Positions 19,101 through 48,870 of a DNA stretch of 64,000 bases are shown in pieces. How positions within the stretch are numbered: the stretch's first letter is position 1; each line of letters starts with the position of its first letter. This DNA is from Dimorphilus gyrociliatus. Taxonomy: Eukaryota > Animalia > Annelida. The notes beneath the pieces were generated by a model, which was not told the origin of the DNA, searched no databases, and saw only the letters and a program-made list of their open reading frames with translations. A program made the translations under genes and the position numbers. The DNA is taken from NCBI GenBank assembly GCA_904063045.1, contig CAJFCJ010000005.1:4121689-4185688 (forward strand), read 5' to 3'.

Positions 19101-20261
19101 ATGTCTGGAAGATTACTTATTCAAAGCGATTGGAATCAATCAATACGGGAAATTGGAGAGAATACATGGGTTTCTTATAAATCCGATGGTAATTTATCTA
19201 TCCAGGGAAAAATTAAAAGTGAAGGTCTTAACGCCCAAGGAGACCCTAGAGTAACTGCCTCTACCGGCTTCGAGGTACTTCAACTATCAAAACGTTCTAT
19301 TGTGGTGCAATACACATCAAGCGAAGGTATAGTTTCTAGACAATTCTACGCCGCAAGTCAGACGTTCTCAATACATAAAAAAGCAGTTAAAAGTATTGAT
19401 ACTTCTGAAGGAGGTCTAGGAGTCTCCACAGATGATGATGAGCGGTTGATTGTATGGACAACAGAGAGTGGTGATATTCGAAGATCACTGAATGAGCAAG
19501 ATGGCCATTTTGGAGATATAAATAATTGTAAATTCTTTCCCTCTGGCCTTGTCTTACTGACTGCTGGAGCCGACACTCGTCTTAAAATTTGGTCAATTGA
19601 AGATGGTAGATGTGGTGCCACGCTGACAGGACATAAAGCCGGTGTTCTTGACACGGCCATAGTAGAGAGAGGGAAAAACATAGTTTCCTCTTCTAGAGAT
19701 GGGACAGTTAAACTTTGGCACGTAGGCACACAGACTATATTACACTCTTTTCAACCAGAAGGAGGATGTGTAAACTCCTGCACTGTTTGCGGTCCCAAGA
19801 GTGAAAGTATATCGGAAGATAATAAAGAATTTGGGACAGATGGCAAACTACTGTTTGTAGGTGGAGAAAATGGGAGAATTGTAGGATATGATATGGCTCA
19901 AAGAGAGAAAATATTCGATATAATGCACAACTCTGCATCAAATTGCATTTCAACTTTCAATGAAAATTTGCTTTGCAGTGGCTTTCAGGATGGAAGTATT
20001 GTATTCTACGATCTGCGAAATTTGAATAGCCCTCTACGAAAAATATACAGTGGAAGAGGTTCTATTTTAGCATCTAAACTCCATTCTAAAAATATGTTCT
20101 TTTCTAATTCGGACGGCAGTGTATTTGGTATTAATGAACAATTCGAAAACGTTGCCGAGTTAACAGGATCCGAATGTGATCCTATTTATAGTTTGTCGTC
20201 TGACGGAACGTATTTATACTCGTCTTGTCGAGATGGAACAATAAGAAAGTATCAAATATAA
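19101..20261 (+). CDS. PAAF1: Proteasomal ATPase-associated factor 1 (WDR71/Rpn14), single coding exon
   Basis: LLIQSDWNQSIRE...WVSYK N-terminus, GHFGDINNCKFFPSGLVLLTAGADTRLKIWS, WD40 repeats, LYSSCRDGTIRKYQI end. Confidence 0.88.
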   Translation: MSGRLLIQSDWNQSIREIGENTWVSYKSDGNLSIQGKIKSEGLNAQGDPRVTASTGFEVLQLSKRSIVVQYTSSEGIVSRQFYAASQTFSIHKKAVKSIDTSEGGLGVSTDDDERLIVWTTESGDIRRSLNEQDGHFGDINNCKFFPSGLVLLTAGADTRLKIWSIEDGRCGATLTGHKAGVLDTAIVERGKNIVSSSRDGTVKLWHVGTQTILHSFQPEGGCVNSCTVCGPKSESISEDNKEFGTDGKLLFVGGENGRIVGYDMAQREKIFDIMHNSASNCISTFNENLLCSGFQDGSIVFYDLRNLNSPLRKIYSGRGSILASKLHSKNMFFSNSDGSVFGINEQFENVAELTGSECDPIYSLSSDGTYLYSSCRDGTIRKYQI

Positions 20262-20572
20262 ATCATTTTATTACTGTTAGTTTCTCTTGTAATAAGATAG
20301 ATGGCAGCAGTGTACTATAACTGAGCACTCATTTTTGGGTGTCTATTTCACTATTTTCGTACAATAACATATTTTTAAATAAAGAGATTAAAAGATTGAA
20401 AATTTAATAGAATTTTTTAACTATATCGCTCACCAAATCTATTTATTTTGGTGCTGTCCTTTCATGTAAAACGCCATCTTGGAAAATACTAGTAATCCAC
20501 GCGGTTTTACGCGAAAATCATTGCCTTTTCTAATTAGCTGGCGGGAAATATTAGGCTAAATAGCAATCAAAT

Positions 20573-23500
20573 ATGCCATCTAATAATCAACTAGATCCTA
20601 AGGAGAATGCTCTCTTTAAACGTGTCCTAGTAAGTATGTTCCCGGCATATATTTTATTACTCTTTAGCAACAGTCTCGTGCCAGTACTAATTTCTAATTA
20701 ATTTAAACCATTTGAAGAAATGTTACGAGCAGAAACAGTACAAAAATGGTCTAAAATTCGCAAAACAAATTCTCTCGAACCCCAAATTCTCAGAACATGG
20801 AGGTAAACAGAAACACCGTTAACCTTTATCACTTTTTTTTTCAACGAACATTACTCATTGCAGAGACTCTTGCTATGAAAGGTTTGACTTTAAATTGTTT
20901 AGGCAAGAAAGAAGATGCTTACGACTACGTTAAAAAGGGATTAAAGAATGATTTAAAGAGCCATGTTTGTTGGCACGTATACGGTCTTTTGCAGAGGTCA
21001 GATAGAAAGTATGAGGAAGCTATCAAGTGTTATAGAAATGCTTTGAAATGGGACAAAGATAACTTGCAAATTCTTCGGGATTTGTCTCTTTTACAAATTC
21101 AAATGCGAGATCTAGAGGGATATAGGGTAAGTTTTATAAATTTATTATTACTTCTCTTTCATGTATTTCTTCTGGCGAAAAGTTTATGCTGAAGAAAATT
21201 ACATATAATGATAACATTAATTTTAGGAAACTCGATATCAATTACTGGTTTTACGTCCGATTCAACGTGCCTCATGGATTGGTTACGCCATGGCTCATCA
21301 CCTACTAAAGAATTACGAAATGGCTTTTCAAGTTTTGGAAGAGTTTCGTAAAACTCAATCCGACGTTAAGCCTTGGGATTATGAACACTCGGAATTACTT
21401 TTATACCAAAATAACGTGCTGACAGAAGCTGGAAATCTGCAGGCAGCACTCGATCATCTTAATAAATACGAAACACATATTTTGGATAAGTTAGTTTTGT
21501 TCGAAACCCGAGGTGAGCTTTTTATAAAAAGTTACATTTAATTTATTATTATATAATAATAGTTTTTTTCCCTTTATCTATCATTTCAAGCCTCTCTACT
21601 GCTAAAATTAGAAATGTTTGAAGAAGCGGAAAACATTTACTTGAAACTAATAGACAGAAATCCTGAAAACAAAGCTTATTATGAAGGAGTTGCAGCTGCA
21701 AGGAGATGTGAAACACCTGAAAGTAAATTAGCAATATATAAGGAAATTAAAGAAAAGTATCCCAGGGCATCCGTTCCACGAAGAATGCCCCTAATATTTG
21801 CTAGTCGTAAGTAAACTGCAGTTTGGGCAACTGCAAATTACTAACAATAATTACTCGTGGTGATAACCTTTACAGCGAGCCAAGGTTTCAAGGAATACGC
21901 AGATGCGTTGTTGAGGCGATCTTTGCAAAAGGGCATCCCACCGTTATTTGTCATGCTAAAGCCGCTCTATCAGGACGCTCAAAAAGTAAACTCTTTGAAT
22001 TATTAGTAATTAATTAACCTTATTAATTAATTATTAACAATTGTTAGGTGACCATTTTGGAAGAATTAATTCTGCAATACGCTAATAATTTGAAAAGTTG
22101 CAATAAATTCCATCATGACGGTAAAGAAACTAATAGTACCCTAAATGAATTGTTTATATGCTCATGTTTACGTTTGACAGACGATGAAACTCAAAATCCA
22201 ACCGTATTATTATGGACATACCATTTACTAGCTCAACATTTCGATCAAATCGGAGATACTGTGAAAGCTCTAGATTACATAAATGAAGCTCTTAATCATA
22301 CTGTCACTCTCATAGAATTGCTTGTAGTCAAAGCAAAAATTTTCAAACATGCTGGCGATGTTGTTCAAGCTGCAGAGTGTATGGATGAAGCACAAAGTTT
22401 GGACACTGCTGATAGATTCATTAATTCTAAGTGTGCCAAATATATGATTAGAGCTGGATGGATGACTAAAGCTGAAGTTATGTGTGCAAAATTTACAAGG
22501 GTAAGTAAAGTTGGTATTTTTTTTATTACTTTTACATAATATTTATATATATTTATATATATCTATATATAATTGAATCACCTAATTTAAAGTTAATATT
22601 TGATTCTATTTAAATAGTAAATAAGGCGTTGATGTAGAAAGTTTGTTTATTGAAATTCCTCTTCCTTTTACAGGAAGGAATGCCCGCTACCGAATCACTT
22701 AATGAAATGCAATGCATGTGGTATCAGAGTGAATGTGCAGCTTCTTATATGAACCAGGGCCGTTATGGTGAAGCCCTTAAGAAATGTGTCGAAATCGATC
22801 GGCACTTTATGCAAATTAATGATGATCAATTTGATTTTCATACTTATTGCATGAGAAAAATGACGCTTCGAGCGTATATTGATCTATTGAGACTTGAAGA
22901 TCGTTTGAAATGTCATAAGTTTTACGTGAAAACAGCTACTATAGCTATATCTATTTATGTTCACTTGCACGATCACCCTGTAGCTGATAGGAAACAGAAA
23001 GACGACAACGATTCTGGCTTATCGGCATCAGAATTAAAAAAACGTAAAAATAAGGAACGAAAAGCGGCTAAGAAGGCTGCTGCTGAGCAAGCAGCTAAAA
23101 GAGCTGAAGAAGCGAAAAAAGAACATAATAAGAAATTACCTCCTGCCGATCCTGATATAGACCGAGTTCCAGAAGAAACTTTAGATCCTGAAAAACTAGA
23201 AAGAACAGAGAAGCCTTTGGATGAAGCAATAAAATTCCTAAAACCATTGCTGAGCTTACGTCCAAACGATTTGAACACGCATATTCTGGCTTTTGAGATT
23301 TATTTCCGAAGAAGTAAACCCCTACTGATGCTGCAAGCAATTAAAAAGGGACTCAGTATTGATACCTGTGATCCTGTTTTGCATACATGCGTAATTAGAT
23401 TTTTGAAATATGTCGCCAGTACCAAGCACGACAACCCAGCTGTTAAGGAAGTATTGGAGTCGGAAATGGCTTCTCTCTTTCCAAACGGTGTTGATCCAGT

Positions 23501-23936
23501 TGTAGTCAACAATAAATTCTTAGAAAACTACCCAAAGAGTTTACCCCACCTATTAGCAGCCGCAAAGATGATGTTTTTGCTCGATACAGAGACTGGTGAA
23601 CGCGCTAGATCTTTAGTAATTGGGCTAAATTCTGATCTAACCTCTGTTAACATTAAGGTAAGAGATATAAATTTGCAAGTTAAGAGAGTAGTAGCCTAAT
23701 ACATAGTTACTATAAAAGAAAACAAAAGCAACCTATACTAAAGATGTTTCATTTACTTTTAAATTTCAGTCATGCACAGAGGTCCTTAAGGCCTTGGAAG
23801 GAGATGAATTAGGTAAATGCGAAAAGATGTATCAAGACTACAAAGAATTGTGCCACGAGAAGTTCCCGTTTGCTCGTGCGTTCTTTCCTCCTAATAAACT
23901 AGTTAATGGTAATTCAGAGGTGGAAAACGAACCATA
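20573..23936 (+). CDS. NAA15: N-alpha-acetyltransferase 15/16, NatA auxiliary subunit, multi-exon
   Basis: [19 protein letters not shown]|[92 protein letters not shown]. Confidence 0.96.
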
Positions 23937-24395
23937 AAGTGCTCGTAGTGTCTTTTCCTGCAGCGTTTTTTAGAGACGCATTTTTATGCAAAAATTATAA
24001 ACTTTTTTTTCGCGAACGAAATAAAACGCGACAGAATGTGTATGGAAAATATATTTCTATTTATCTTGTAAGAACTTCTTTCCCTCCTTTGTTGAACTGT
24101 ATTAAAACGTTCAATGAACAGTTAATTGTTTTGTCTTTTTTTTACGTTTGTGTGTTGGGGAAATGACGCTTTCTTGTTGAAAAAAAAAATTCTCTTTTTT
24201 TTAGGTTGACTTTTTTTTTAATGCATAAAAACAATCGCGTCGTTTTATATAAAAATAATGAAACAAAAGAAAAAAAGGAAAGTAAAAAGGAAAAAAATAT
24301 TAAGCAATATTTTATAATAAGCGCTTTGTTTTGTTTATGAGAAATACACAACAAATTACAATTTAGATAGTTTTTATAATAAATAATAAGTCCTC

Positions 24396-25448
24396 TTAGG
24401 TATGAGTATGAGATATAACAAGCCAACTGATTACAAAGTAGAAAAGAAAAATTGGATATACTGCTAACGCTTTTCTTTTTGGCGGTTGACTTTCCGATAG
24501 AAAAGCTGTTGAGGCTGTATATGGGTTTTATATATAATATATAACTTATATTATTTCTCATATGTTCAATCTTTTACTTACCGAAAGTGGACCAACCAAA
24601 GGCAATTAGAACAACCACACATCTTATTATAAATAGTACTACTGATTGTGTTTCTGCTAATAGTATTATTCGGCATACTATTAGTGAGACAGCCAGTGGA
24701 AGAACACAATACCCTAGCACGCAAACAGACTGAAAGAAACTTATAGATCCTCCTAAAAGTTTTATATTCAATGTAACTATAAATGCTCCAACCCAATAAA
24801 TAACAAAAACTTCGGCAAATTGAGGCCCTCCATCATTACTGCTATCAATAGTTTTAGTTGAACCTTGCAACATCCTGTTTAATTTAATTTTATTATTGGT
24901 TATGATTTTTTTCGATTGATTCCTTATTTTCGCTTAAATGTTTCTTTTAGTCATTTTGCACGTTACGTTTATAATTTAGAAGATTATTTGTACTTACATT
25001 GCTAGAAAGATACAAAGAATCAATGGCCCCCAAAGATCCCATTCTCTTAATAAAGCTCTACTTTCTTTTGGCCATAAAACATGAACAAATTTCTTTCCAA
25101 CAGCTTTAACATCTCGAAGCTGGAAAATATTTTGGTCAGTTAAAAACAAAAAAAAACAAATTTAACAAATAAAATGTATCTTGATTACTTACTACTGTTA
25201 CTCTAACCGGTTCATCCAATGTTGATAAATCATCTTCTTCATCAGGTGCTCCTGGTACTGTTATATCACCCTCCAAATCAACAGAAATACCAGGGTTCTA
25301 AAAATAATATATAATTTAGGAAATTCATTAGAAATAGTCTTATCACCTAGTTGAACTCTAAAACTGTATTAATTGAATTTAAAATTTATTTGACAGTTAC
25401 TTTAATAAGACTATTTACCTCTTTAAATTCTCCGTCCACGTCAGCCAT
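24396..25448 (-). CDS. YIPF6: Yip1 domain family member 6, multi-exon
   Basis: Exons encode STLDEPVRVTV, LLREWDLWGPLILCIFLAM, GGPQFAEVFVIYWVGAFIVTLNIKLLGGSISFFQSVCVLGYCVLP and a final ASTAFLSESQPPKRKALAVYPIFLFYFVISWLV. Confidence 0.92.
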
Positions 25449-25521
25449 ATCTTTTACTAAATGAATGGAATTTGTAACCTTACTAAGAGAGAGAATTTTG
25501 TTTTTTCAATGTAAAGCTCGC

Positions 25522-25532
25522 TAGATGGCGCT
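25522..25532 (+). promoter_or_regulatory. CTCF-like motif (CGC)TAGATGGCGCT between the YIPF6 start and the 7SK promoter
   Basis: Best match in the window to the CTCF consensus. It lies ~75 nt upstream of the YIPF6 ATG. Confidence 0.55.
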
Positions 25533-25793
25533 ACAGAATAAAAACACTACACGAATATAGGGTTATATAGAATAGAGAAGATGGTAATGAAATTTATTTT
25601 TCAATTTACCGATTTATGGCGTAAATTCGATAAAAGTTAAAGAATATGAAAGGAGCATATCTTGTATCCAAATTTAATTATGCTAGAAAGACAACGTTTG
25701 CTAGAACCGTTAAATAGAAAATAGTATTTGTACGTTATCTTATTAGCATACAACCAATTTAGATTAGTCGGCTAGCCATCAAACTTTGGGGGA

Positions 25794-25801
25794 TATATAA
25801 A
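25794..25801 (+). promoter_or_regulatory. TATA box of a type-3 Pol III promoter (7SK)
   Basis: TATATAAA lies 32-25 nt upstream of the predicted +1 G at 25826. A PSE is expected at about 25760-25790 but is not confidently identified. Confidence 0.6.
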
Positions 25802-25825
25802 CGGAAGGATTGAGATATAGTTATT

Positions 25826-26068
25826 GAATGCGTGGTGTCCACGGGACGTCTGAACATCGATCGCTGATAACCTATAGGGCGTACGGCAGATCTGTTTAGA
25901 ATCGTTCTTCCACATACACATTCATTCGTCGGTTCCCGATGCACGGTACGATCGCTCGGTCGAGCCTCATTAACATACCCATAAGCATATAGTCCAGCTA
26001 GGATTTAGTGTCATTTGGTTTAAGACGCATTCAGTTGCAGGCACTGTCGTAGCAGTTTGCCTTATTTT
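25826..26068 (+). ncRNA. RN7SK: 7SK small nuclear RNA, ~243 nt
   Basis: 5' GAATGCGT (25826-33) pairs with ACGCATTC (26025-32), forming stem M1. The hairpin TCTGAACA-TC-GATC...GATC-TGTTTAGA (25849-25900) carries the paired GAUC HEXIM motif. A 3' hairpin AGGCACTG...CAGTTTGCCT (26039-62) is followed by a T6 terminator, and a TATA box lies upstream. Confidence 0.85.
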
Positions 26069-27791
26069 TTAAATTCAAAAACTAATCTTGTTGCCTCTTT
26101 CTGCGCACTACACTTGCTTTTTTCGTCTTGCACAAAGACAATTTCCAATAGCCTATTATAGTGCTAATGATGATAATTAATTAGGGAGGATGGTTAATGA
26201 ATATTCATGAAGTGAGGAGGAAAATGATATATTGGAACAGAGGGAATTTGGAAGAGGTCTTCAATTTCGATTTCCTTGCTTTCTGCATGGATTAGCAGAG
26301 GGTTTTTTTTTGACTTTGATCAATTCGGTTTTCCTATTCTAATTATTTAACTATTTTGCTGCTCTAGCTAAAAATTGGTAGGAATATCGAATAAAAAATG
26401 AGCTGGCAATTGGAATAAGCAACGTCCAAAATCAAATTATAAAGATTGGGATGTCTTGTTATGAGAAACGAATCACTCAGGCACTCGCAAATAAATTAAT
26501 CAAATTTAGACGCTGAAAGAATCATTAACGGCTTCTTATAAGCGTCGCCGTCTTACAGATCTGTATACTCTAGTAGTTATATTATGATTATGATTATTAT
26601 TATTATTCCTACTTGAAAGATGCTCCGTACTTGTTTTATTATTCCATAATTAGCGTACTAGTGCAGTTGTCTATTACACAAAAACAGTATACTAAGTGCA
26701 GTTTTTTGATGGCCCACAAAATGGATAATATAATATCAAATAGAGAAAAGAAAAGACTAAGGAAAGAAATATTGTTTTATTTCCTTCTCTCTCTCTCTCT
26801 CTGCCAATCTCCCATCTTTCTCTTCTGTGGCTGCTTGTCCACCGTATACTATATACTACGTCTGTATAGTAGAAATCCTGACTTATAAGTGGCGAAATCC
26901 CATTCAACGTTGCGATAGTGTTAGGTTTTAGACAATAAATGGAACCTTTTCAAATGAAAGAGGATCCATTAGCGTACTTTCCGTTTCTACTTTACTTTCT
27001 CGCCTCCTCATCGACTAGCGAACTAATTGTTAGTTAAACGCCAATTAAGCGATTTTGGAGGCTGAATTTTACCAAGCGTGTAGCGGAACGGGTGCGTCTA
27101 ATAGGCAGGAAGTGGGAAATTGTCAACTCTGCTCCGCCTAACTTCCCCTCGAGGTGCTTGTATAAGAATTGCCTTTCGCCCGAAAGAACGATATCAAAGT
27201 TGACGCGGAAGCCACTGATCTGCAGTAAAAGGGTTTTATCCGCCGCAATAATCCAACGGCCCTTATAGGCGTTCTATTACATTGTATATAGGAAGAAAGT
27301 AACAGCAAGGTGGAAGCAAGAACTTTTCACAATCAGTTTTCGAGCGTCCAATTAAAATTTTCGATTGTGTAAAGCAGAACCGTAGAATAAATGAGAAGTG
27401 TCAGAACGGATTATATCTATTGTAGGACTATTCATTCTCTTCCTATTCCAGTTAGACGTATGCACCAGCGAATATGGAAACGCTTCGTCGATTTTCGAAT
27501 CAAGTAAAAAATTACCCGTGTTGAATTTTTTCTTTATAAAATGGTTAATTGAAGACCTTTGGCTATTTCGTGACGCTCCGTCAAAGTAAATAACATAAAA
27601 GAAGCACAAAGTAGTAGAGGGAGGAAATAGATTATGAGAAAGAATATCGTGAAAATAAAGCCTGGAGGATGATCATGATGAGGACAATGACGACGACGAC
27701 GATGACGACAACGGTCGTGATAGGTTATATGAAGAGATGGCGAGAAGAGATGGATTGCAGTTTTATATTTTTCGACCAAATGCTTATCTTC

Positions 27792-48729: not shown

Positions 48730-48768
<39 letters not shown>

Positions 48769-48832
48769 TAGATAGATAAAGAGATAGAGAAAAACAGAAA
48801 TGAGAGGTAAACACATATGGTACACGTGTGCG

Positions 48833-48870
<38 letters not shown>
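48730..48870. repeat. Inverted (AG)n/(CT)n fold-back: 38-bp arms, 65-nt loop
   Basis: 48730-48767, (AG)n-AATG, is the reverse complement of 48833-48870, CATT-(CT)n, with one G-T pair. Confidence 0.8.

What the first reader, a model, noticed from the sequence alone, without database searches (positions are those of the whole stretch)
25826..26068. Compact, divergent 7SK snRNA gene in the YIPF6 upstream region
Seen in sequence: TATA box at -32/-25, start GAATGCGT pairing with ACGCATTC near the 3' end, a hairpin with two opposed GATC motifs (25859, 25889) flanked by TCTGAACA/TGTTTAGA, a terminal AGGCACTG...CAGTTTGCCT hairpin and a T6 run. Established knowledge: these are the M1, M3 (HEXIM/P-TEFb-binding GAUC) and M8 (LARP7-binding) elements of 7SK, and the M3 wording resembles my recollection of Drosophila 7SK. 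Inference: at ~243 nt with a GAAUGCGU rather than GGAUGUG M1 it is unusually short and divergent, and likely missed by standard annotation. It could inform the minimal 7SK architecture in lophotrochozoans.
Basis: partly seen in the sequence, partly recalled or inferred. Interest (0 to 1): 0.78.

Follow-up and report, generated by a model that had tools for sequence, protein, structure and literature searches.

The report
Compact 7SK RNA gene, miniature annelid
This is a genuine but ordinary gene for 7SK RNA, the small nuclear RNA that holds the transcription-elongation kinase P-TEFb in check, in the tiny marine worm Dimorphilus gyrociliatus; at about 243 nt it is short, but a standard Rfam scan already finds it.

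Summary
Rfam's Arthropod_7SK model matches 25826-26071 (+) end to end at 47.9 bits (gathering 44, E 3.9e-9), and it is the only above-threshold RNA family in the window. The genome is Dimorphilus gyrociliatus, an annelid.

A related worm, with 71% identical PAAF1, keeps the same gene order (PAAF1-NAA15-YIPF6-7SK). There the transcribed part is 230/236 identical at aligned positions. A 26-nt upstream block (-87 to -62) and the TATA box are also conserved. The spacers (about 48-50%) and the downstream flank (31%) are not.

Comparison with four to six environmental 7SK genes shows compensatory base-pair changes in the closing stem M1, the GAUC hairpin and the 3' hairpin. Short contigs from RNA libraries lie wholly inside the predicted transcript.

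So this is a real, constrained, Pol III-type 7SK gene. It is the shortest 7SK seen here (243-246 nt against 309-395). It is not strongly divergent, and Rfam does not miss it. Annelid 7SK RNAs have been known since 2008, so this is a new member of a known kind, of modest interest.

The parts
25722..25764 (+). Conserved upstream block, a candidate proximal sequence element (PSE) of an snRNA-type promoter. The core 25739-25764 lies at -87 to -62.
   Evidence: 39/43 identical to the orthologous locus L001, with the core 26/26 identical, while neighbouring spacers are 48-50% identical. It is unique in the window. The PSE function is inferred. No other snRNA promoter of this genome was available for comparison, and it could also serve the divergent YIPF6 promoter.
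25785..25801 (+). G-run plus TATA box (TATATAAA at 25794-25801, -32 to -25).
   Evidence: 15/17 identical to L001, between diverged spacers. The position fits a type-3 Pol III promoter (established knowledge).
25826..26070 (+). 7SK snRNA gene: transcript from G25826 to within the T6 run, about 243 nt.
   Evidence: Rfam RF01052 Arthropod_7SK, 47.9 bits against gathering 44, model positions 1-351. 230/236 aligned positions are identical in the syntenic orthologue L001:8553-8798, which itself scores 50.5 bits. Contigs from RNA libraries cover 25842-26040 and never reach the flanks.
25826..25833 (+). M1 5' strand (GAAUGCGU).
   Evidence: Pairs with 26025-26032 in the minimum-free-energy fold. Position 2 is A-U here and in L001 but G-C in four other 7SK genes. 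Position 4 is U-A here but A-U in the arthropod-type genes.
25835..25915 (+). 5' hairpin (SL1/M3). An 8-bp lower stem, a UC bulge, GAUC (25859-62) paired with GAUC (25889-92), and an apical stem-loop. This is the presumed HEXIM-binding site.
   Evidence: Fold. RNAalifold on 8 sequences gives 22 pairs, 4 of them with compensatory changes. The lower stem has A-U here against C-G in L007/L018. The two GAUC motifs are 26 nt apart, within the published 6-30 nt criterion (PMC2995076).
25927..26018 (+). Reduced central domain: three short predicted hairpins (25927-41, 25945-66, 25979-26018), including the conserved block CGCUCGGUCGA at 25953-25963.
   Evidence: The hairpins are predicted by the fold only. 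The block aligns to the arthropod model consensus GCGCACGGUuGA with high posterior probability. The two substitutions against L001 in the 25945-66 hairpin keep pairing (A-U to G-U, G-C to G-U). Indels fall at junctions, and one falls inside a predicted stem.
26025..26032 (+). M1 3' strand (ACGCAUUC).
26039..26062 (+). 3' hairpin (M8/SL4): lower stem GGC/GCC, a UU bulge on the 3' side and an upper stem. This is the presumed LARP7-binding site.
   Evidence: Fold. RNAalifold on 6 sequences gives 9 pairs, 2 of them with compensatory changes.
26065..26070 (+). T6 Pol III terminator, the source of the 3' oligo-U tail.
   Evidence: It is the only T run of four or more in the gene. Sequence conservation with L001 ends here (31% identity downstream).
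24574..25448 (-). YIPF6 (DgyrCDS4079), the divergently oriented neighbour. Its start codon is at 25448.
   Evidence: The sequence of P0104 equals the window's exons. Pfam Yip1.

Best explanation
25826-26070 (+) is the functional 7SK snRNA gene of the annelid Dimorphilus gyrociliatus.

Mechanism (inferred by homology, except where marked as shown):
- RNA polymerase III transcribes it from an external snRNA-type promoter, with the TATA box at -32 to -25 and a conserved upstream block at -104 to -62. Transcription starts at G25826 and ends in the T6 run, giving an RNA of about 243 nt.
- The RNA folds into the 'closed' 7SK architecture: an 8-bp M1 helix joins the 5' end to the segment just before the 3' hairpin (shown by fold and covariation).
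- The long 5' hairpin presents the paired GAUC/GAUC motif with a bulged pyrimidine pair. In other animals HEXIM binds there and then captures and inactivates P-TEFb (CDK9/cyclin T).
- The 3' hairpin plus the U-tail would bind LARP7, and the 5' triphosphate would be capped by MePCE.
- The central domain, which is variable among invertebrates, is cut down here to three short hairpins. It keeps one conserved sequence block.
For: - Rfam RF01052 full-length match above the gathering score.
- The unconstrained fold gives M1, the GAUC hairpin and the 3' hairpin.
- A syntenic orthologue exists in a relative whose PAAF1 is 71% identical. Conservation follows the expected gene anatomy: transcript 230/236, upstream core 26/26, TATA block 15/17, spacers 48-50%, downstream 31%. 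An independent coral-metatranscriptome contig shows the same pattern and stops aligning at 26069.
- Compensatory changes occur in M1, the 5' hairpin and the 3' hairpin.
- There is no internal T4 run.
- Contigs of 160-199 nt from an RNA library and two other runs lie entirely within 25842-26040.
- The literature places 7SK in annelids, molluscs and arthropods, with M1, M3 and M8 as the core (PMC8406779, PMC2995076, PMC10083321).
Against: - No read-level data show a discrete RNA with these ends. Contigs cannot show ends, strand or abundance, and no RNA run of the source species itself was laid.
- The Rfam score is only 3.9 bits above threshold, and through the arthropod model.
- The covariation sample is small (6-8 sequences), and the central-domain hairpins rest on one close relative.
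- PSE identity is not shown, and the block-to-TATA spacing (about 29 nt) is wider than I recall for flies or vertebrates.
- The presence of HEXIM, LARP7 and MePCE in this genome was not verified here. Only an untested note of a HEXIM gene exists.
- The rest of the genome was not searched for other 7SK copies.
Confidence: 0.92

Rival explanations
1. It is a non-functional or secondary 7SK copy (a pseudogene or retro-copy), and the working, full-length 7SK lies elsewhere in the genome.
For: 7SK pseudogenes are common in mammals (established knowledge). This copy is about 90 nt shorter than vertebrate 7SK. The whole genome could not be scanned here.
Against: It has its own conserved TATA box and upstream block. 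It sits at the same syntenic position in a relative. The transcribed part is 230/236 identical against 31-50% in spacers and flanks, which indicates purifying selection. The orthologue is equally short at 246 nt, so the shortness is a lineage trait and not decay. RNA-library contigs match it. No other 7SK is noted in the scan's index.
Confidence: 0.04
2. It is a 7SK-like paralogue or another small RNA that shares the GAUC hairpin but has a different role, in the manner of Drosophila snRNA:7SK:94F.
For: Drosophila has a second 7SK-like RNA (PMC8406779). The reduced central domain could mean altered partners. Another reader notes a HEXIM with a changed PYNT motif (s1-083699, untested).
Against: All three core 7SK motifs are present in canonical order and spacing, with a Pol III TATA box and terminator and no internal T runs. 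This is unlike 94F, which has internal T tracts (PMC8406779). The Rfam match is full length.
Confidence: 0.03
3. The conservation reflects DNA-level regulatory sequence of the divergent YIPF6 promoter and not an RNA gene.
For: The element lies about 380 nt upstream of the YIPF6 start codon. The upstream block could serve both genes.
Against: A 240-nt stretch that is 97% identical, bounded exactly by a TATA-plus-30 start and a T-run, with compensatory base-pair changes across distant taxa and a covariance-model match, is not what a promoter looks like. Four other annelids have no such element near YIPF6.
Confidence: 0.01

Closest known systems
Rfam RF01052 Arthropod_7SK (clan CL00013, 7SK)
   Same: End-to-end match. 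There is near-identical wording of the GAUC hairpin arms (CAU-GAUCGC ... GCAGAUCUG), the central block CGC-CGGU-GA and the 3' hairpin GGCACUG..GCAGUUUGCC.
   Different: About 105 of the 351 model positions are deleted, all in the central domain. M1 reads GAAUGCGU where the model has GGAAGUGU. The host is an annelid, not an arthropod. The score is only just above gathering.
Lophotrochozoan (annelid and mollusc) 7SK RNAs of Gruber et al. 2008, Marz et al. 2009 and Yazbeck et al. 2018
   Same: Same phylogenetic group. The same M1/M3/M8 core, with bulged pyrimidines beside the GAUC stem, as stated for lophotrochozoa in PMC2995076 and PMC8406779.
   Different: D. gyrociliatus postdates them, and its genome paper does not mention 7SK or ncRNA annotation.
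Environmental invertebrate 7SK genes L007:2650-2987 and L018:197-516 (metagenome contigs)
   Same: M1 is GGAUGCGUG/CACGCAUCC, one compensated pair away from this gene. Same GAUC hairpin, same 3' hairpin layout, a TATA-like box near -31 and a T4 terminator.
   Different: They are 320-338 nt, have 58% G+C and carry a much larger central domain. Their host organisms are unknown.
Human 7SK (332 nt) and Drosophila 7SK (444 nt)
   Same: Pol III snRNA-type gene. GAUC/GAUC HEXIM site in the 5' hairpin. 3' hairpin plus U-tail for LARP7. Closed form through M1 (PMC10083321, PMC8406779, PMC2995076).
   Different: About 90 and 200 nt shorter, respectively. The central stem-loops (SL2/SL3 equivalents) are reduced to three short predicted hairpins.

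Membership tests
7SK snRNA (Rfam clan CL00013) | Covariance-model score at or above the curated gathering threshold | tested here: met
   RF01052 scores 47.9 bits against 44, E 3.9e-9, model 1-351. The orthologue L001 scores 50.5 bits. The general model RF00100 gave only a lower, clan-suppressed match and was not listed at gathering.
7SK snRNA (Rfam clan CL00013) | 5' hairpin with two base-paired GAUC motifs 6-30 nt apart, flanked by bulged pyrimidines (the criterion quoted in PMC2995076) | tested here: met
   GAUC at 25859 and 25889, 26 nt between them. They pair in the fold. There is a UC bulge on the 5' side, which is UU in the relative. 22 alifold pairs, 4 of them compensatory.
7SK snRNA (Rfam clan CL00013) | M1: a helix between the 5' end and the segment just upstream of the 3' hairpin | tested here: met
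   8 bp, 25826-33 with 26025-32. Two positions show compensatory double changes across 6 sequences.
7SK snRNA (Rfam clan CL00013) | M8/SL4: a 3'-terminal hairpin followed by an oligo-U tail | tested here: met
   26039-26062, followed by UA and then U6. 9 alifold pairs, 2 of them compensatory.
7SK snRNA (Rfam clan CL00013) | Type-3 Pol III gene: upstream TATA box near -30, a PSE, a T-run terminator and no internal T4 | tested here: inconclusive
   The TATA box, the terminator and the absence of internal T4 are met. A conserved block at -104 to -62 is a PSE candidate, but it could not be compared with U6 or other snRNA promoters of this genome.
7SK snRNA (Rfam clan CL00013) | Expressed as an abundant discrete small nuclear RNA | tested here: inconclusive
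   Contigs in one certain RNA library (X11) and two further runs cover 25842-26040 with one difference and no flank. Contigs cannot show ends, strand or level, and these runs are not labelled as the source species.
7SK snRNA (Rfam clan CL00013) | Binds HEXIM, LARP7 and MePCE and sequesters P-TEFb; co-occurs with HEXIM in the genome | not testable with these tools
   There is only an untested first-reader note of a HEXIM gene 1.86 Mb away on the same scaffold. No notes exist for LARP7 or MePCE.

The most novel reading that the evidence does not exclude
The 7SK of Dimorphilus and its relative is a natural near-minimal 7SK. It would be the shortest bona fide one, having shed most of the SL2/SL3-equivalent domain while keeping M1, the GAUC hairpin, one central block and the 3' hairpin. 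It may have shrunk along with genome compaction. Together with a HEXIM whose P-TEFb-inhibitory motif is reportedly altered, this could define the smallest RNA scaffold that still controls P-TEFb, or show that this control has been rewired.
Probability: 0.2. Interest if true: 0.45.

Novelty: new member of a known kind. Interest (0 to 1): 0.3.

Why it matters
It adds a missing housekeeping RNA gene to the annotation of a model compact animal genome; the genome paper does not discuss ncRNAs. It also gives a well-bounded, naturally shortened 7SK of about 243 nt that keeps every core motif. Such an RNA is a convenient template for structural or biochemical work on the minimal 7SK scaffold. The promoter footprint also supplies a candidate annelid PSE. 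None of this changes what is known about 7SK biology.

Tried and rejected
- **Published papers.** I tried to read Gruber 2008, Marz 2009 and Yazbeck 2018 to compare lengths and stem A/B models. None is held, so the 'shortest lophotrochozoan 7SK' claim stays open.
- **Synteny in other annelids.** I looked for other annelid 7SK genes next to YIPF6. The loci of Capitella, Paralvinella, Owenia and Ridgeia, each with 10 kb flanks, have no Rfam 7SK hit and no GAUC-hairpin pattern. The YIPF6-7SK linkage is therefore specific to the dinophilid lineage.
- **Metagenome pattern scan.** A scan for the GAUC hairpin gave 16 loci. Four are clear 7SK genes and two are partial or atypical: L011 is cut by the contig end, and in L015 no M1 partner or 3' hairpin was found. 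Ten are GC-rich chance matches without a lower stem.
- **Upstream block elsewhere in the window.** A search with up to 3 mismatches found only the block itself.
- **Bacterial-type promoter and terminator scan.** This is irrelevant here.
- **Run accessions in papers.** A search for the relative's run accession gave unrelated hits.
- **Non-bilaterian host.** I considered a placozoan or other non-bilaterian host, which would have been highly novel. I rejected it because the neighbouring YIPF6 is DgyrCDS4079 of D. gyrociliatus and PAAF1 groups with molluscs.

Full report
**Observation.**
- TATATAAA lies at 25794-25801, which is -32 to -25 from G25826.
- GAATGCGT at 25826-33 is complementary to ACGCATTC at 26025-32.
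- GATC occurs at 25859 and 25889, embedded in TCTGAACA...TGTTTAGA.
- A hairpin AGGCACTGT/GCAGT-TT-GCCT spans 26039-62.
- A T6 run lies at 26065-70.

A gathering-threshold Rfam scan of the whole window gives a single hit. It is RF01052 Arthropod_7SK at 25826-26071 (+), 47.9 bits against a gathering score of 44, E 3.9e-9, covering model positions 1-351. A permissive scan of the locus adds only chance-level matches. It notes one lower-scoring match from the same clan, presumably the general 7SK model, which did not appear at gathering level.

The unconstrained minimum-free-energy fold (-73.7 kcal/mol, z = -2.7) reproduces three elements on its own. These are an 8-bp closing helix between the two ends, a long 5' hairpin in which the two GAUC motifs pair with each other, and the 3' hairpin.

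**Organism.**
- The neighbours are ordinary animal genes: TMEM131, BAG, PAAF1, NAA15, YIPF6 and NDC1.
- PAAF1's best named relatives are molluscs (44-46% identity), and it groups with them in a tree with support 87/91.
- A homologue search seeded from the relative's YIPF6 returned DgyrCDS4079 of Dimorphilus gyrociliatus. It lies on a 4,546,684-nt contig, the same length as the contig carrying the window's PAAF1. Its sequence equals the window's YIPF6 exons.
- This agrees with a follow-up note of the scan. It also agrees with the published genome: 73.8 Mb in about 350 scaffolds.
- That paper does not mention 7SK, ncRNA or Rfam.

**Orthologue and footprint.** A Logan contig from a relative (L001; its PAAF1 is 71% identical) keeps the order PAAF1-NAA15-YIPF6. 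About 1 kb upstream of YIPF6, on the other strand, it carries a 246-nt 7SK that scores 50.5 bits. Identity in the pairwise alignment follows the anatomy of a Pol III snRNA-type gene:

| Segment | Identity |
|---|---|
| Far upstream | 48% |
| Block 25722-25764 | 91% (core 25739-25764: 26/26) |
| Spacer | 50% |
| G-run plus TATA | 15/17 |
| TATA-to-start spacer | 48% |
| Transcript | 230/236 aligned positions, plus 7 indel columns |
| Downstream of the T-run | 31% |

A 10.8-kb contig from a coral metatranscriptome shows the same differences and stops aligning at 26069.

The few changes inside the RNA fall in these places:
- the pyrimidine bulge next to GAUC (C to U);
- the apical loops of both terminal hairpins;
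- junctions;
- two positions of a central hairpin where pairing is kept (A-U to G-U, G-C to G-U).

One 2-nt deletion falls inside a predicted central stem. That stem is therefore not secure.

**Wider comparison.** One metagenome scan for the hairpin wording gave 16 loci.
- Four are full 7SK genes by Rfam. L009 (309 nt) and L013 (395 nt) are arthropod-type, scoring 127-132 bits. L007 (338 nt) and L018 (320 nt) score 50-57 bits.
- Two show only the 5' hairpin (L011, L015).
- Ten are GC-rich chance matches.

All six full genes fold with the same three elements. Covariation is present in each.
- In M1, position 2 is A-U in the two worm genes and G-C in the others. Position 4 is U-A against A-U in the arthropod type.
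- In the 5' hairpin, RNAalifold finds 22 pairs, 4 with compensatory changes. These include A-U against C-G in the lower stem.
- In the 3' hairpin, 9 pairs are found, 2 of them compensatory.

The sample is small, so this is supportive and not statistically rigorous.

The worm genes are the shortest of the set. The missing length lies entirely in the central domain, where about 105 positions of the arthropod model are deleted. The block CGCUCGGUCGA (25953-63) still aligns confidently to the model there.

**Expression.** The source species' DNA runs hold the stretch. Three short contigs cover 25842-26001, 25842-26040 and 25844-26029, each with a single difference (C to T at 25961). None extends into the flanks. 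They come from a marine metatranscriptome (a certain RNA library), a run guessed to be RNA, and a run of unknown type. This fits a transcribed small RNA from a very close relative or strain. Contigs cannot show ends, strand or abundance, and no RNA run of the species itself was examined.

**Mechanism.**
- *Shown:* a selectively constrained unit with a TATA box at -30, a conserved upstream block, a T-run terminator with no internal T4, and a covarying M1, GAUC hairpin and 3' hairpin.
- *Inferred from established 7SK biology* (PMC10083321, PMC2995076, PMC8406779): Pol III transcription; MePCE capping; LARP7 on the 3' hairpin and U-tail; HEXIM on the GAUC motif; and reversible sequestration of P-TEFb.

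I did not test this.

**Comparison and novelty.** 7SK RNAs of annelids, molluscs and arthropods were described in 2008-2009, and their M1/M3/M8 core is textbook (PMC8406779). The central stem-loops are known to be poorly conserved in invertebrates (PMC10083321). This gene meets every sequence and structure criterion I could test, so it is a member of the family.

Three things are new.
- The species.
- The compact size, shared by the relative and therefore a lineage trait.
- The head-to-head linkage to YIPF6, which is absent within 10 kb in Capitella, Paralvinella, Owenia and Ridgeia.

A default Rfam scan finds the gene, though with a thin margin and only through the arthropod model.

**Verdict.** This is a real 7SK gene and a new member of a known kind, of modest interest.

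Noticed in passing
window 48731-48869: A (GA)n ... (TC)n inverted microsatellite folds into a long perfect hairpin (-77 kcal/mol). It draws sub-threshold hits to many plant MIR families on both strands. This is a low-complexity artefact, not a miRNA.
   Followed up: yes
window 19101-26071 and L001 986-8798: The gene order PAAF1-NAA15-YIPF6(-)-7SK(+) is conserved between D. gyrociliatus and a relative with 71% identical PAAF1. BAG and an RPN11-like gene lie upstream in L002. Four other annelids lack 7SK within 10 kb of YIPF6.
   Followed up: yes
window 25842-26040 (runs X5, X7, X11): Near-identical 7SK contigs (one C to T difference at 25961) turn up in runs labelled as other organisms and in marine metatranscriptomes. 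A more diverged locus turns up in coral metatranscriptomes. Dimorphilus-like worms, or their RNA, seem to be common passengers in marine and aquarium samples.
   Followed up: partly
If that is right, it bears on how this 7SK works. I did not check it.
   Followed up: no
L009 4389-4509 and 8105-8413: On an environmental arthropod-type contig, a 5S rRNA gene lies about 3.6 kb from the 7SK gene on the same strand.
   Followed up: no
window 26209-26282: A weak SNORD69-like match just downstream of 7SK (21 bits against gathering 37, E 0.51 on a 901-nt search). It is most likely chance.
   Followed up: no
L015 118-494 (-): An environmental contig has a TATA box and a canonical GAUC hairpin, but I could not find the M1 partner or a 3' hairpin. 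It is either a divergent 7SK or a decayed copy.
   Followed up: partly
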